From Octopus sinensis (taxonomy: Eukaryota): a stretch of DNA of 5,208 nucleotides. This document shows positions 187 to 5,208 of the stretch, in pieces. The stretch covers positions 1 through 5,208 of the forward strand of contig NW_021830113.1 of NCBI RefSeq assembly GCF_006345805.1, read 5' to 3'. Both the position numbers and the translations under genes were made by a program. The notes beneath the pieces are model-generated. The model made no database searches and was not told the DNA's origin. It worked only from the letters and a program-made list of their open reading frames with translations. How positions within the stretch are numbered: position 1 is the first letter of the stretch; each line of letters opens with the position of its first letter.

Positions 187-668
187 CTGTATGTGTGTTG
201 TCTGTTGCATTGCCCGTTACACCAATGTGTTATCACAACATGATCCATCATACAACAAATTGGCCTTTTACTCAACGACATACATGCATGTAGTAGTAAA
301 CAAGGTAATGTAAACTGGGAGGCTAAGAGAAACTTATACGCAAATGAATTAACATCAACAGAACCAGAAGCCAAACAGAAGATATTTGATGATAAGCTAT
401 CTGCGTTAAACAATGTTGACAAACAATAGAAAGGGAGACATTGTTCGATTTTAGGGAGTAACTCGAAATGCTTGTGTTCTAGTATAAGGTTACAGCGTGC
501 TGTCTGACGATTGAAACTGGTGTTTGTTTGTTTATTCGATAGATTGGTGTGTAGAGCTAAAAGCCCCATCCTATGGGCTAAAATTCTTTTTTTTTCACCC
601 TAATGTTAGGAACTAGGAGATTAGCAAATGGAATTTAAAACGATTAAAGATGCTACACTTAGCTGCTA

Positions 669-670
<2 letters not shown>

Positions 671-719
<49 letters not shown>

Positions 720-739
720 ATGATGAGGAGGAGGAGGAG
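671..739. repeat. Compound trinucleotide microsatellite (GCT)10(GAT)8(GAG)5
   Basis: Direct count: gct x10 at 671-700, gat x8 at 701-724, gag x5 at 725-739, all in one phase. Confidence 0.97.
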
Positions 740-754
740 GAAGAGGGGGACTTT

Positions 755-993
755 GCATCTTTCACCTGTTTCAGTCATTGGACTGTGGCCATACAAGGAG
801 GGTTTTAGTCGAACAAAACGACCCCTGCGCGTATGTTGTTTTTACTTTTGAAGCCTGGTGCAATCGGACTCTTGCCGAACCACTAGGTTACGTGGACATA
901 AAAAACCAACAAATGTCAAGTGCTGTGATATTGGACATACACAAGCACGCCACGCACACACGCACACCGAACACAAACACACACACACACATA

Positions 994-1080: not shown

Positions 1081-1358
1081 TCATACACGCCAGCTCAATT
1101 TGATTCGTTTAGTTATATTAGATACATTATGAAATGAGAGGCCTTAGTACGCAGGAAATATAGATTAGTACCGTTAGGATTAAGTACGGTTATTATATAC
1201 TGTATGAAGTCTTGTACATGGTACTTGATAACGTATTTTGCCTGGACACAACGTTTGTTGTTTGCATCAGCTGTGTTCATATCTTATTACTGGGGCTTAG
1301 CGATGTCTTTGATTGATGCCACGAACTTCCTTTTTCGACTATCTCGCTGTCTCTTTTT

Positions 1359-1400
1359 ACACACACACACAGACACGCACGCACAGATTATATATATGTA
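1359..1400. repeat. Short (CA)n/(TA)n microsatellite
   Basis: Direct: acacacacacacagacacgcacgcacagattatatatatg. Confidence 0.8.
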
Positions 1401-1770
1401 TGAATTTTGTCAATAAATATACTTATTTCTGAGTAAGTTCGGTTATCAGTTACAAATATGTTAGATTTGTCGTTTAACTGATATGTGTGAAATAGTCAAA
1501 ACGAAACAGAACATCTGTACATCTCAAGTTTCCATGGCAAGACACCAGGTATGCCTGTTGATCCGTGGATTATTGTGTCAATTCAAAGATGACAGGATAC
1601 GCTGTTTTAATTGCTTAGTCAAAGGAACAAGATCAACACCTCTGATCTCTTCCAGGGTTTATGAGACAGATGTAAACGAGAAATCCTGATCCAAATACTT
1701 GTATTGGAAAAGGCTCCATTAAAGACACTCAACAGCGACGTTGTAACGTTAAACTGTGCGCTTGGTTTAT

Positions 1771-1980
1771 AATTTAGCCACGAGTTATTCGTGATTGAGT
1801 TGATTAATTATCAAAGACATTTAAGCCATAACAATCCCGTCTTAATTTTCAGGGATACCGTTCCATTCATATTCACATGACTTTAAAAATAAAAAATAAA
1901 AACCGCAGTGTAATTAGAGGGAGATTTGGCTGCTATGTGTAGGACATCAAGCGATCGTATAGAGAGTCTCTTATTGATTC
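1771..1980 (-). repeat. ~200-bp bipartite repeat, unit U1
   Basis: A-block 1771-1850 (tttagccacgag..tgattgag..caaagacatt..atcccgtctt). B-block 1906-1975 (gtgtaattagagggagatttggctgctat..tcaagcgatc..tagag). atcccgtctt is identical at 1834-1843 and 2670-2679. Strand inferred from the AAC-type tail seen in other units. Confidence 0.8.
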
Positions 1981-2035
1981 GATAACAAAATACATGGATC
2001 AACTTCCCGTCAAAGTGTTTGATAATGTTGAATCT

Positions 2036-2186
2036 ATTGTTTGAACCCAAGCCAACCCTAATCGAGCAGACCCCCACGAAAAAGAATTTTGTATCTGCTT
2101 GTTTAAGCCGGTAGGGGTACAATACGATAAAGATTCGGCTGCTATTTCTGACAGGCCAAGTAACCAAATAGAGATTCTAACATTGT
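2036..2186 (-). repeat. Bipartite repeat, unit U2 (internal deletion)
   Basis: A-block tgtttgaacccaagccaaccctaatcgagcaga; atcgagcaga 2061-2070 vs atcgagtaga 2631-2640 is 9/10. B-block ggtagggg..agattcggctgctatttctgacaggccaagtaacca is 14/15 to U1 over agatt(t/c)ggctgctat. Confidence 0.8.
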
Positions 2187-2345
2187 TTCATTTCATCCAC
2201 TCATACTGTTATTGTCCAAAAGTATTCCACGTGTGGTAATCTCGTTTCTTTGAGGCTCATAGAAGAACATTACCCAATGTGTCTTGTTTTACGTAGGTTC
2301 AATCGGTGGAATGACCAAGAGCAATCCACAAATCTAGAGTTTCAG
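2182..2345 (-). repeat. Degenerate bipartite repeat, unit U2b
   Basis: caaaagtattccacgtgtggtaatctcgtttcttt resembles the A-block end. acattacccaatgtgtc 2267-2283 is 14/17 to acattatcgaacgtgtc 3144-3160. B-block is heavily eroded. Confidence 0.55.
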
Positions 2346-2359
2346 ACACAAGTATACTT

Positions 2360-2490
2360 CAGGTTTCCTAAGGACCAGGTTCTCACTCTAGCATACAGCG
2401 GTTTATGGCATGGGATGCATTGATACGGCTGAATCTAGTGGTGGCTTTAGAGACAGATTTGGTAGCATCGCCCATAGCACGATATTTGCA
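2360..2490 (-). repeat. Degenerate bipartite repeat, unit U3
   Basis: tagtggtggctttagagacagatttggtagc (2436-2466) resembles the B-block tagagtgtaatttgagggagatttggctgc. The upstream ccaggtt.. is only weakly A-like. Confidence 0.4.
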
Positions 2491-2603
2491 ATACATTTGC
2501 ATCTATCTCTAGTGATACGGATTTAAAGGTAATGATGGTGCTCCTATTTTAGCGTGTATATGCTTTTTATGTTTTCTTGGCTGTTTTTTGTACTATCATA
2601 GTT

Positions 2604-2818
2604 GCTGTTGTTTAGTCCAGAACGTCCATGATCGAGTAGATTTACAAGCAAACGCATACAACCCATGCATATCCCGTCTTTTATCGAGGTGTTCTGTATC
2701 TAAATTTGCATTATTCAACGTTTCCTAGTCTTTAAGATAGTAGAGCGTAATTTGAGGAAGAGTTGGTTGTTATTTTCAACCAGTTGAGCAACCACGTAGA
2801 AGTTCCTTTATTGCTTCT
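2604..2818 (-). repeat. Bipartite repeat, unit U4
   Basis: gctgttgtttagtccag..tgatcgagtaga..atcccgtctttt, linker gcattattcaacgtttc, then B-block gtagagcgtaatttgagg (17/18 to U5)..gagcaaccacgtagaagttcct. Confidence 0.85.
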
Positions 2819-3041
2819 GAAAACTGAGCTATCTTATGTTATTTATAGTCTGTTGGAGTTTGCAGCAGAGTGTTTGGGGTCAGGTCTAGTGTAAACTATA
2901 ACGGATCTAGTACATCGTTTGAGCAAAGTAAAAGACATTCCTTCATTTGAAGAAATTGACGGTGTTTCGGAAAGCATCTGCGACAACGCTGACAACAACG
3001 TTGGCAATATTTTCGCTGTCATCATCGTCGTCGACATCATC

Positions 3042-3250
3042 GCTGTTGTTTAATCCCGAGTTAGTCCTGATTGAATATGTCTATCACCAAATGTACTCCA
3101 AATGTGACCATCTCTCTTTTTGAAAAAGCAGAAGCACAGGACTACATTATCGAACGTGTCCTTGAGATATGGTAGAGTGTAATTTGAGGGATATTTGTCT
3201 GCTGTTTCTGGCAGATTGTGTAACCAGGCTGAGGCTTCCGCGTTGGCTTA
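3042..3250 (-). repeat. Bipartite repeat, unit U5
   Basis: gctgttgtttaatcccgagttagtcctgattgaa..gtgaccatctctctttt, linker ggactacattatcgaacgtgtcc, then B-block ggtagagtgtaatttgagggatatttgtctgctgtttctggcag..taaccagg..gaggcttcc. Confidence 0.85.
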
Positions 3251-3306
3251 GTGGTGATGATGCTGAGAATTGTTGTTGTTGCTGTTGGTGGTGGTGATGG
3301 TAGTCG
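3250..3306. repeat. Degenerate trinucleotide low-complexity tract (GGT/GAT/GTT)
   Basis: Direct: gtggtgatgatgctgagaattgttgttgttgctgttggtggtggtgatggtagtcg. Confidence 0.8.
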
Positions 3307-3402
3307 TGCTGGCCATAATAAGGATTAACCAGATAATTCGCTGGACTAGAATATAATTCCATCGGTTCCTAATTTTTAAAATTTTCTGTCTGGACTGTAT
3401 TC

Positions 3403-3617
3403 CTGTGTGTATGAGTGTCGGTGAACGCGAGTGTGTGCGTGTTTGAGCGTGTGTATATGTATGTGCATGTGTCTGTGTTTGTATCTCAAAAGATGTGTCA
3501 ATGAGTTTTTATGATTGTTCCTTTCAGTGTGTACGAACGTATGCGTTTGATATTGTGTCTGCACATGCGTGTTTTTGCGAATATTTTCGTTTGTGTATGC
3601 ATACGTGTGCGTGTATA
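3403..3617. repeat. Degenerate (GT)n-rich low-complexity region
   Basis: Direct: many gtgtgt/gtgcgt/gtatgt stretches interrupted by short unique sequence. Confidence 0.75.
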
Positions 3618-3619
3618 CT

Positions 3620-3681
3620 GAGAGAGAGAGAGAAAAGAGAGAGAGGAAGAGAGAGATATATATATATAGAGAGAGATAGAT

Positions 3682-3711
<30 letters not shown>
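3620..3711. repeat. (GA)n with embedded (TA)n
   Basis: Direct: gagagagagagaaaagagagagaggaagagagagatatatatatatagagagagatagatagagagag... Confidence 0.95.
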
Positions 3712-3712
<1 letters not shown>

Positions 3713-3733
3713 TTGCTCTGCGTGAGTGTATGC

Positions 3734-3737
3734 ACAA

Positions 3738-3768
<31 letters not shown>

Positions 3769-3852
3769 CATGCACGTAATCCTCTGTGTGCGTATATATA
3801 TTACACATACACAAACATACACACATACACACACATATACGTATATCTATAC
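3734..3852. repeat. (CA)n/(TA)n mixed microsatellite
   Basis: Direct read of the sequence. Confidence 0.9.
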
Positions 3853-3858
3853 ACAGAG

Positions 3859-3896
<38 letters not shown>

Positions 3897-3905
3897 AAGA
3901 GACAT
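3853..3905. repeat. (GA)n microsatellite
   Basis: Direct read of the sequence. Confidence 0.95.
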
Positions 3906-3963
3906 ATAGATATTTCTGTACATATGTATCCCTATTCGGATGCATATGTAAATGAAAGTTAGT

Positions 3964-3990
3964 GCACACACACACACACACAACACACAC

Positions 3991-4034
<44 letters not shown>
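3964..4034. repeat. Compound (CA)n(CT)n(CA)n microsatellite
   Basis: Direct read of the sequence. Confidence 0.95.
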
Positions 4035-4134
4035 GCTCGTTTGTATGCCTGTATGTGTGAACCTGAATGCATTGAGCGTGTATATTTATTTTACACAAAC
4101 ACAAGTGTTTCTTACAAAGATAACTTTCCTACAA

Positions 4135-4135
<1 letters not shown>

Positions 4136-4191
<56 letters not shown>
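4136..4191. repeat. Perfect (CA)n microsatellite, ~27 units
   Basis: Direct read of the sequence. Confidence 0.98.
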
Positions 4192-4193
<2 letters not shown>

Positions 4194-4479
4194 ATAAATG
4201 GACGGACTAAACAAATATCAGAACAGATTACAAACTACTACGACTTCATTTCAAATCGGCTGCAGTAATTTTGTGATCCATCTTTGCAATAAATCTACTT
4301 CAGCTGGTCCCAGGATAACTTAACCTTCGATTATAAGTATCAGATCTCCTGTGATGATAACCTACGATACGTTACCATTCCATCAAAAAGATTTTCATCA
4401 AAATTTTTAGGGTTATGAAATCTGAGGTAAACAGTGCTCCTTATAGGTTTTCCATGTATATTTACCCTCCAGTCACCTA

Positions 4480-4606
4480 TATACATACATACACACATAC
4501 ATACATACATGCATGCATGCATGCATGCATACATACATACATACATACATACATACATACATACATACATACAAACATGCATGCATGCATACATACATAC
4601 ATACAT
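4480..4606. repeat. Compound tetranucleotide repeat (TACA)n with two (TGCA)n blocks
   Basis: Direct: TGCA blocks at ~4510-4530 and ~4578-4590 within TACA runs. Confidence 0.97.
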
Positions 4607-4843
4607 GGAAACTCGTGCTATATATACATATATAAAGAAGACCGTGGTATATATATATATGTGTGTGTGTGTGTGTTTGTGTGTGTGTGTGGGTGTGGGT
4701 GCGTGTGTGTGTGTGTGTGAGTGTGTGTTTCTGTCTCTGTCCCACCATCACCACCGCTTGACAGCAGGTGTTGATGCGTTTGCATCCCATAAGTTAGCAG
4801 CACGGCAAAAGAGGCCGATAAAATAAGTACCAGACTTGAAAAA

Positions 4844-4861
<18 letters not shown>
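4605..4861 (+). mobile_element. SINE-like repeat, copy 2 (same family as 755-1080), truncated at an internal A-tract
   Basis: 4740-4838 is the inverted homolog of 849-934 and is preceded by (TA)n(TG)n, mirroring copy 1. atggaaact..aagaagaccgtggtata resembles the pre-microsatellite segment of an Octopus SINE as I recall it; the left boundary relies on that recollection. Confidence 0.7.
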
Positions 4862-4888
<27 letters not shown>

Positions 4889-4931
4889 CTATTTATATAA
4901 TATATCTATATATATATATATATATATATAT
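4839..4931. repeat. A23 run followed by (TA)n
   Basis: Direct: A-run 4839-4861, then interrupted TA repeats to 4931. Confidence 0.97.
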
Positions 4932-5208
4932 GGTGTGCCCACTCCGTCGGTACGACGACGAGGGTTCCAGTTGATCCGATCAACAGAATAGCCTGCTCGT
5001 GAAATCAACGTACAAGTGGCTGAGCACTCCACAGACACGTGTACCCTTAACGTAGTTCTTGGGGAGATTCAGCGTGACACAGAGGGTGACAAAGCTGGCC
5101 CTTTGCAATAGGAAGAAAATGTAACCACGGTTGCTTCAGATAAGACCTGAGAACTCTACCCCCATTGCTTCCAAAGAATCGTGGGCGAAGAAAACGGATG
5201 GACGGAAG
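4932..5208 (+). mobile_element. Interspersed repeat body (SINE or non-autonomous retroposon-like, probable Octopus family), continues beyond the window
   Basis: Abrupt GC/CpG rise after (TA)n and several local hairpins. The stretch gttccagttgatccgatcaac..gtggctgagcactccacagacacgtgtacccttaacgtagttc matches an abundant octopus repeat I recall. It has no second copy in the window, so identity and strand rest on recollection. Confidence 0.6.

What the first reader, a model, noticed from the sequence alone, without database searches (positions are those of the whole stretch)
1771..3250. Cryptic same-orientation cluster of a ~200-bp bipartite element hidden in apparently unique DNA
Four clear units (U1, U2, U4, U5) and two eroded ones (U2b, U3) share the order A-block, linker (acattatccaatgtgtc-like), B-block. 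All are on the same strand. Some abut (U2/U2b) and others are separated by ~60-230 bp of unrelated sequence. Copies differ substantially from each other, so this is not a recent tandem duplication. Uniform orientation with no inverted copy suggests multimeric head-to-tail retro-insertion, self-targeted insertion, strand-biased retention in an intron, or an old decayed satellite. The alignments are seen directly; the mechanism is inference.
Basis: partly seen in the sequence, partly recalled or inferred. Interest (0 to 1): 0.7.

Follow-up and report, generated by a model that had tools for sequence, protein, structure and literature searches.

The report
Decayed same-strand ~212-bp repeat cluster
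A 1.5-kb stretch of non-coding, microsatellite-rich animal DNA holds three full and two partial very old copies of a ~220-bp sequence on one strand, most likely a worn-down short tandem array, which is an ordinary kind of repeat relic.

Summary
The repeat is real but smaller than described. Three full copies (1756-1988, 2591-2829, 3030-3251), one strong half copy (2110-2193) and one moderate partial copy (2197-2288) lie on the + strand. The best self-hit scores 46.8 bits, against at most 28.3 in 60 shuffles. There are no inverted copies and no copies elsewhere in the window.

Copies are 49-61% identical (JC 0.56-0.87), so they are old. The units show no ORF, codon periodicity, tRNA, Rfam family, Pol III boxes, terminal inverted repeats or stable fold. 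The DNA between units is unrelated both to the unit and to the other spacers. Its lengths (about 133, 302 and 200 bp) nevertheless keep all five copies in register on a 212-bp lattice (p about 0.03).

I favour a decayed short head-to-tail array (about 0.5), possibly once carried by a mobile element. Mollusc arrays with replaced monomers are a described precedent.

The main rival is independent insertions of an old SINE-like element (about 0.25). No cephalopod genome or repeat library was available, so genome-wide copy number, the decisive test, could not be measured. Interest is low.

The parts
1756..1988 (+). U1, a full unit (A-block, degenerate linker near 1875-1891, B-block with core at 1910-1934)
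   Evidence: nhmmer places it at 1768-1988 with the three-copy profile and at 1756-1892 plus 1902-1984 with the separate A and B profiles. It aligns to U4 at 61% identity, E 2e-6.
2032..2084 (+). Possible head of U2's A-block. Weak. If it is real, U2 carries an internal deletion of about 54 bp.
   Evidence: nhmmer E 0.34 and 0.14. Local-alignment z 1.9, reached by 10 of 200 shuffles.
2110..2193 (+). U2 B-block, a strongly supported half unit
   Evidence: nhmmer E 1e-8 against a profile that did not include it. z 10.9 against shuffles. 55-57% identical to the other B-blocks.
2197..2288 (+). U2b, the distal A-block plus linker (ACATTACCCAATGTGTC at 2267-2283). It abuts U2 and has no B-block.
   Evidence: nhmmer E 1e-4 against the three-copy profile. 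z 3.3. Closest to U5 at 57% identity, but only 39% to U1. Linker match.
2289..2590 (.). 302-bp spacer unrelated to the unit. Its length equals the missing U2b B-block (about 90 bp) plus one 212-bp unit.
   Evidence: No similarity to the units, with z -1.4 and -0.1 in local alignment and -0.5 in global alignment. Not homologous to the other spacers. U3 has E 1.2.
2591..2829 (+). U4, a full unit (linker GCATTATTCAACGTTTC near 2708-2724, B core at 2747-2771)
   Evidence: nhmmer 2591-2829. Aligns to U5 at 62% identity, E 4e-8, and to U1 at 61%.
2830..3029 (.). 200-bp spacer, about one unit long and unrelated to the unit. A weak, non-significant, roughly in-register B-like stretch lies at 2945-3005.
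   Evidence: z 1.8 in local alignment, reached by 11 of 200 shuffles. z -0.55 in global alignment. The best local alignment, to the U5 B-block, implies a unit start 25 bp from the lattice position.
3030..3251 (+). U5, a full unit (linker ACATTATCGAACGTGTC at 3144-3160, B core at 3179-3203)
   Evidence: nhmmer 3030-3250. Alignments. Linker. B-core pattern.

Best explanation
This is the relic of a short local head-to-tail array of a non-coding monomer of about 212-220 bp. It is a satellite-DNA-like short array of roughly seven monomer slots spanning about 1756-3251. It formed by local amplification (replication slippage or unequal exchange) and may have arrived already arrayed inside a non-autonomous mobile element, as described for other molluscs. 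It then decayed neutrally to 50-60% identity.

Some monomers or monomer parts were mutated beyond recognition or replaced by unrelated sequence of about the same length. This left three full and two partial recognisable units in register, all in one orientation.

What is shown: the copies, their shared orientation, their divergence, their register, and the absence of coding, RNA or transposon-end signals. What is inferred: the amplification mechanism, any mobile-element carrier, and the replacement events. I assign no present-day function.
For: - The copies are real, occur only on the + strand, and are confined to this 1.5 kb.
- U1, U2 and U2b follow one another within 45 bp and 3 bp.
- Homologous anchor points 1914, 2124, 2308, 2751 and 3183 fit a 212-bp lattice at slots 0, 1, 2, 4 and 6, with a maximum residual of 15 bp. 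Only 3% of random placements fit as well.
- The unrelated stretches (about 133, 302 and 200 bp) match the lengths of the missing unit parts (about 140, 90+212 and 212 bp).
- B-block distances are nearly equal (JC 0.56-0.69), which fits one amplification burst. U2b against U1 is already at noise level (39%), so fully unrecognisable units are plausible.
- There is no tRNA-like head, Pol III box, terminal inverted repeat or poly(A).
- Short dispersed arrays averaging about 3.6 monomers are documented in the oyster (PMC7492417).
- Monomer remnants in register with an array, interrupted by unrelated sequence as long as the missing part, are documented in the oyster Crassostrea gigas (PMC5139131).
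Against: - The two long spacers (2289-2590 and 2830-3029) show no similarity at all to the unit (z about -0.5) or to each other. Monomers of equal age should have decayed equally, so extra replacement or insertion events must be assumed.
- U1, U4 and U5 begin and end at roughly the same unit positions next to unrelated DNA, within about 15-25 nt. That pattern is more typical of a discrete insertable element.
- The lattice p-value is only about 0.03. One step of the lattice (U1 to U2, 210 bp) may result from a 45-bp gap offsetting a 54-bp deletion.
- Tandem Repeats Finder does not see any array here.
- No genome-wide data could be obtained.
Confidence: 0.5

Rival explanations
1. The units are independent insertions of an old dispersed short element (SINE-like or other non-autonomous). 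The copies accumulated in one neighbourhood in one orientation, through target preference (for example the triplet-type simple sequence seen at the unit heads) or through orientation-biased retention in a transcribed region.
For: - The full units have roughly coincident ends and are flanked by unrelated complex DNA.
- Distances among copies are star-like.
- Octopus genomes are very rich in SINEs: 11.6% of the genome with hundreds of unclassified families (PMC13282606), and SINEs make up about 40% of transposable-element content (PMC8967140).
- Read on the minus strand, each unit ends in an AAC/AGC-rich run (for example the complement of 2597-2620 and of 3035-3050), which could be a degenerate simple-repeat tail. 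This comes from reading the sequence.
Against: - No tRNA-like head or RNA-family match, and no conserved A or B box.
- No poly(A), unlike the retroposon-like piece at 4741-4861 in the same window.
- No recognisable target-site duplications on reading the flanks.
- Five copies cover 58% of 1.5 kb, with none in the other 3.7 kb. That is far above chance for any but a million-copy family.
- The in-register 212-bp spacing is unexplained by this model.
- U2b lacks both ends of the unit, so secondary deletions are needed on either strand.
Confidence: 0.25
2. This is an ancient tandem duplication of a segment of about 430 bp, in which only about 220 bp per period is kept similar by selection, for example as repeated cis-regulatory modules. 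The rest has drifted to randomness.
For: - Unit starts at U1, U2b, U4 and U5 are spaced 405, 433 and 438 bp apart (virtual starts 1752, 2157, 2590 and 3028).
- Similarity falls to background at about the same unit positions in different copies.
- Three-way invariant positions cluster in blocks, for example 18 of the 25 positions of the B core.
Against: - U2 sits inside the first supposed spacer, which breaks the 430-bp scheme.
- The 430-bp pattern depends on choosing which copies to count.
- There is no structural RNA signal (z 0.66 and -0.01; weak consensus fold).
- There is no coding signal.
- Identity of 50-60% between paralogous copies is not what constrained modules usually show.
- No cross-species data are available.
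Confidence: 0.07
3. These are chance similarities in AT-rich, low-complexity DNA, so no real repeat exists.
For: Identity is low (49-61%). The window is full of simple repeats.
Against: - The four best + strand self-alignments (46.8, 41.1, 35.4 and 32.6 bits) all exceed the maximum of 28.3 in 60 shuffles.
- The U2 B-block is found at E 1e-8 by a profile that did not include it.
- The 25-nt B-core pattern occurs 3 times, against 0 in 200 shuffles.
Confidence: 0.02

Closest known systems
Short satellite-DNA-like arrays carried by non-autonomous Helentron/Helitron-type elements in bivalve molluscs (Cg_HINE in Crassostrea gigas, PMC7492417; the 'pearl'/DTC84 type in Donax trunculus, PMC3879986)
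   Same: A few same-orientation head-to-tail monomers in the 100-200-bp range, dispersed in euchromatic DNA (on average 3.6 monomers per array). A microsatellite lies upstream of the array at a variable distance of 10-500 bp. Here (AC)n at 1359-1385 lies about 370 bp before U1. The host is a mollusc, if my attribution to an octopod is right.
   Different: The monomer here is about 212-220 bp, against 140-180 bp. Copies are only 50-60% identical and are interleaved with unrelated DNA. No 11-12-bp subterminal inverted repeats link the left and right flanks. No palindrome is conserved at unit junctions. With microsatellites everywhere in this window, the upstream (AC)n is not diagnostic.
'Cut-and-replace' interrupted monomers beside Cg170/BIV160 satellite arrays in molluscs (PMC5139131)
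   Same: Recognisable monomer pieces stay in register with the array but are separated by anonymous sequence of about the same length as the missing monomer part. Here the spacers are 133, 302 and 200 bp, against expected 140, 302 and 212 bp.
   Different: In the published cases the replaced pieces are 19-64 bp and the monomers are 80-90% similar to consensus. Here whole monomers would be replaced and everything is far older. Register is supported only at p about 0.03.
tRNA-derived SINEs of octopuses (tRNA-Core, tRNA-Deu and many unclassified families; PMC8967140, PMC13282606)
   Same: Unit size of about 200-250 bp, non-coding, roughly constant ends, star-like divergence, and a host genome in which SINEs are the dominant repeat class.
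   Different: No tRNA-like head or Pol III boxes, no A-rich tail and no target-site duplications. Local density and register are far from a dispersed pattern. Copy number in the genome is unknown.

Membership tests
tRNA-derived SINE | tRNA-related 5' head with Pol III A box (TRGCNNAGTGG) and B box (GGTTCGANNCC) | tested here: not met
   ARAGORN finds no tRNA. Rfam has no hit within 1771-3250. There is no B-box match with up to 1 mismatch anywhere in the window. One A-box-like match lies at the end of U5 only (3244-3254), and the window total of 2 is consistent with chance. Old copies could have lost these signals.
tRNA-derived SINE | 3' poly(A) or simple-repeat tail and flanking target-site duplications | tested here: inconclusive
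   No poly(A) on either strand. On the minus strand each unit ends in a degenerate AAC/AGC-rich run. No duplications were seen on reading the flanks. At this divergence both features could be erased.
tRNA-derived SINE | Many dispersed solitary copies genome-wide | not testable with these tools
   No cephalopod genome, Dfam or Repbase was available. The pattern scans covered only metagenome, viral and prokaryote collections.
MITE / TIR DNA transposon | Terminal inverted repeats at the unit ends | tested here: not met
   The inverted-repeat search of 1700-3320 gives only scattered 12-16-nt pairs, none at unit termini.
Tandem-repeat-bearing non-autonomous Helentron (Cg_HINE / DTC84 type) | Central array of head-to-tail monomers | tested here: inconclusive
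   U1, U2 and U2b are near-contiguous, and all five copies fit a 212-bp lattice (p about 0.03). However, two lattice slots hold unrelated DNA, and Tandem Repeats Finder reports no array.
Tandem-repeat-bearing non-autonomous Helentron (Cg_HINE / DTC84 type) | 11-12-bp subterminal inverted repeats in the left and right flanks | tested here: not met
   No 11-mer with up to 1 mismatch is inverted between 1085-1765 and 3240-3420. At 25-30% divergence per copy such short signals would mostly be lost, so this is weak negative evidence.
Tandem-repeat-bearing non-autonomous Helentron (Cg_HINE / DTC84 type) | Microsatellite in the left flank, 10-500 bp before the first monomer | tested here: inconclusive
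   (AC)n-like tract at 1359-1385, about 370 bp upstream of U1. The window carries more than 20 microsatellite tracts, so the coincidence is uninformative.
Tandem-repeat-bearing non-autonomous Helentron (Cg_HINE / DTC84 type) | Palindrome near each monomer junction (DTC84) | tested here: not met
   Only U1 has a stable head hairpin (z -4.2). U2, U4 and U5 do not (z 0.0 to 0.8).
Classical satellite DNA | Long homogeneous tandem array | tested here: not met
   At most about 7 slots, 49-61% identity, interrupted.
Structured non-coding RNA or miRNA cluster | Stable or covarying secondary structure, or an Rfam match | tested here: not met
   Fold z-scores are 0.66 (+ strand) and -0.01 (minus strand) for U5. 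Consensus-fold energy is weak, -14 and -7 kcal/mol. No Rfam hit lies in the region.
Tandemly duplicated coding exons | An open frame per unit and three-base periodicity of substitutions | tested here: not met
   Every full unit has 2-8 stop codons in all six frames. Variability by codon phase is 0.59, 0.65 and 0.67.

The most novel reading that the evidence does not exclude
The units are copies of a cephalopod repeat that is not yet catalogued and that propagates as monomers in register. It could spread by inserting next to its own kind in a fixed orientation, or by a 'cut-and-replace' process that swaps whole monomers for foreign DNA of equal length. On this reading the lattice of recognisable and unrecognisable slots records an active mechanism and not plain decay.
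Probability: 0.07. Interest if true: 0.5.

Novelty: new member of a known kind. Interest (0 to 1): 0.18.

Why it matters
This matters little on its own. It is a very old, non-coding repeat relic in a genome type where about two thirds of the DNA is repeats (PMC13282606). It has modest value in two ways:
- The held paper library returned no satellitome study of a cephalopod, so these repeats appear little described. A monomer family of about 212 bp organised in short interrupted arrays would extend to cephalopods a pattern described so far in bivalves.
- It shows that unique-looking sequence between microsatellites can hide repeats at 50-60% identity that standard tandem-repeat finders miss.

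Tried and rejected
- **Coding exons:** rejected. No ORF above 94 aa in 1100-3450, stops in every frame of every unit, and no codon periodicity.
- **Structured RNA or miRNA cluster:** rejected. The many sub-threshold miRNA hits elsewhere in the window are microsatellite artefacts.
- **tRNA-derived SINE head:** not found.
- **MITE or Helentron ends:** not found.
- **Conserved palindrome at the unit head:** present in U1 only.
- **The unit as a dimer of related A and B halves:** rejected, z 0.0.
- **Higher-order repeat of 430 bp or 837 bp with homologous spacers:** rejected, because the spacers are not similar to each other.
- **Spacers as decayed units:** no support in local, profile or global tests.
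- **External searches, all uninformative:**
  - Exact look-up of window ORFs found nothing on record.
  - Two protein homology searches found no candidates.
  - The B-core pattern scan of metagenome contigs gave three contigs from one project that match only the 25-45 nt around the pattern, so they are chance hits.
  - Scans of viral and prokaryote genome contigs gave nothing.
  - A literature search for sequence strings from the flanking SINE-like elements gave nothing.
- **Source organism:** my attribution to an octopod rests only on my memory of abundant octopus SINE-like sequences resembling 755-900, 4741-4838 and 4930-5208. No tool confirmed it.

Full report
**Setting**

The window is eukaryote-like non-coding DNA, 38% GC, with more than twenty microsatellite tracts: (AT)n, (CA)n, (GA)n, (ATAC)31 and a compound (GCT)13(TGA)9(GAG)8. 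The finding lies in the only long stretch free of simple repeats, about 1100-3400.

From memory only, the pieces at 755-900 (minus strand), 4741-4838 and 4930-5208 resemble very abundant octopus SINE-like elements. No tool could confirm it. Two protein searches and exact ORF look-ups returned nothing, as did a literature search for the sequence strings.

**Is the repeat real?**

Yes. A sensitive self-comparison of 1081-3420 gives four + strand alignments:
- 2597-2806 with 3035-3239 (62%, E 4e-8)
- 1792-1986 with 2629-2824 (61%, E 2e-6)
- 1907-1947 with 3176-3216 (78%)
- 1922-1980 with 2131-2189 (70%)

In 60 dinucleotide-preserving shuffles the best + strand self-hit averages 19.8 bits and never exceeds 28.3, against 46.8 observed. 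The best minus-strand hit (22.6 bits) is below the shuffle mean, so there is no inverted copy.

A profile of the three full copies recovers five pieces on the + strand and nothing else on either strand of the window:
- U1 at 1768-1988
- U4 at 2591-2829
- U5 at 3030-3250
- the U2 B-block at 2122-2190 (E 1e-8), which was not in the profile
- U2b at 2216-2283 (E 1e-4), also not in the profile

Against shuffles, the U2 B-block has z 10.9 and U2b has z 3.3. The 25-nt B-core pattern occurs three times, against none in 200 shuffles.

**What does not hold up**

- The head of U2 (2032-2084) is weak, E 0.14-0.34.
- The linker motif is well kept only in U2b and U5.

The supported inventory is therefore three full units, one strong half unit and one moderate partial unit. 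Together they cover 870 of the 1496 bp between 1756 and 3251.

**Properties of the unit**

| Property | Result |
|---|---|
| Pairwise identity | 49-61% (JC 0.56-0.87) |
| B-block distances | Nearly equal for all six pairs (JC 0.56-0.69), i.e. star-like |
| U2b relationships | 57% to U5 but only 39% to U1 |
| Open reading frames | Stops in all six frames of every unit |
| Codon periodicity | None (0.59, 0.65, 0.67 by phase) |
| tRNA | None |
| Rfam | No match in the region |
| Pol III boxes | Not conserved |
| Terminal inverted repeats | None |
| RNA fold of U5 | z 0.66 (+ strand) and -0.01 (minus strand); consensus folds weak |
| Relation of A-block to B-block | None, z 0.0 |
| Base composition | Units and spacers do not differ |

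A calibration quoted for octopus transposable elements puts JC 0.2 to consensus at about 56 My (PMC13282606). On that basis, about 0.3 per lineage would mean roughly 80-100 My. This is a rough inference that assumes neutrality and an octopus source.

**Arrangement**

U1 is followed after 45 bp by the weak U2 head. U2's B-block is followed after 3 bp by U2b. Then come 302 bp of unrelated DNA, U4, 200 bp of unrelated DNA, and U5.

The spacers are not similar to the unit in local, profile or global tests (z about -0.5 for both long spacers). They are also not similar to each other.

Two features point in different directions:
- **Towards a discrete insertable unit.** Similarity between full copies falls to background at roughly the same unit positions, within about 15-25 nt.
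- **Towards one head-to-tail array.** Homologous anchors at 1914, 2124, 2308, 2751 and 3183 fit a 212-bp lattice at slots 0, 1, 2, 4 and 6, with a maximum residual of 15 bp. Only 3% of random placements do as well, with the period left free between 190 and 250 bp. Put another way, the unrelated stretches (about 133, 302 and 200 bp) have just the lengths of the unit parts they stand in for.

**Interpretation**

I favour a relic of a short head-to-tail array of a monomer of about 212-220 bp (confidence about 0.5). It was amplified locally, or delivered already arrayed inside a non-autonomous mobile element, and then decayed. Some monomers were lost to mutation or replaced by unrelated DNA.

This account explains the clustering, the single orientation, the register, the adjacency of U1, U2 and U2b, the burst-like distances and the absence of retroposon hallmarks.

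Its weak point is that equally old monomers should have decayed equally, so replacement or insertion events must be added. There is a published precedent in the oyster Crassostrea gigas. Monomer remnants there lie in continuity with an array but are disrupted by unrelated sequence similar in length to the missing part, which the authors interpret as cut-and-replace events (PMC5139131). Short dispersed arrays averaging 3.6 monomers are also carried by non-autonomous Helentrons in the oyster (PMC7492417) and by the DTC84 MITE in a clam (PMC3879986).

I do not claim membership of those families. No subterminal inverted repeats link the flanks. No junction palindrome is conserved. The upstream (AC)n tract is uninformative in a window this rich in microsatellites.

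**Rivals**

- **Independent insertions of an old SINE-like element (about 0.25).** This explains the roughly constant unit ends and the unrelated spacers, and it suits a genome in which SINEs dominate. It has no positive hallmark. It leaves the density unexplained, with five copies in 1.5 kb and none in the other 3.7 kb. It leaves the register unexplained, and it needs secondary deletions for U2b.
- **A 430-bp duplication with a selectively conserved half (about 0.07).** It has no independent support.
- **Chance (about 0.02).** The shuffle controls exclude it.

**What could not be done**

No cephalopod genome or repeat library is reachable with these tools. The scans of metagenome, viral and prokaryote contigs gave only three chance matches limited to the pattern itself. 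They are spelled out under next steps.

**Verdict**

This is a real but ordinary feature: an ancient, decayed, same-orientation repeat cluster. Interest is low.

Noticed in passing
window 662-750: Compound triplet microsatellite (GCT)13 (TGA)9 (GAG)8. In one frame it reads as poly-Leu, poly-Met and poly-Arg, but no credible ORF surrounds it.
   Followed up: no
window 4741-4931: A stretch of about 100 bp (4741-4838) is followed by a perfect A23 run (4839-4861) and then (AT)36. It looks like a retroposon copy with its poly(A) tail seeding a microsatellite. From memory it resembles the 5' part of an abundant octopus SINE-like element. It serves as an in-window contrast to the tail-less units of the finding.
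   Followed up: partly
window 755-900 (minus strand) and 4930-5208: Two further pieces that, from memory, resemble abundant octopus SINE-like repeats. An A-box-like TAACCTAGTGG lies at 880-890 on the minus strand. A protein-level search with a translation of 4925-5208 found nothing.
   Followed up: partly
window 3400-4740: A very dense block of different microsatellites: (TG)n-like, (GA)47, (CA)n, (CT)n, (AC)27, (ATAC)31 and (TG)34. These tracts produce dozens of sub-threshold Rfam miRNA hits (mir-297, mir-466 and others) that are artefacts. The (CA)n and (TG)n tracts also form long imperfect inverted repeats (995-1078 with 4622-4705; 4131-4191 with 4660-4740).
   Followed up: no
window 2012-2030: Between U1 and U2, the minus strand carries a short linker-like motif (ACATTATCAAACACTTT). 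It is complementary to 1807-1821 and pairs with the linkers of U2b and U5 (inverted pairs I3, I10, I15). It is too short to separate from chance, and no wider minus-strand similarity to the unit exists.
   Followed up: partly
window 3010-3050 and 3252-3300: U5 is bracketed on both sides by degenerate triplet-type simple sequence (GAT/GTC/GCT/GTT/GGT runs). The heads of U4 and U5 begin with GCTGTTGTT. This could be a simple-repeat tail or target on the minus strand, or just local slippage.
   Followed up: partly
L001 1388-1432, L002 1496-1532, L003 5805-5849: Three metagenome contigs from one project (Ga0114962, Ga0114963, Ga0114967) match the 25-nt degenerate B-core pattern. Similarity does not extend beyond about 45 nt, so these are chance matches to one organism sampled three times.
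   Followed up: yes
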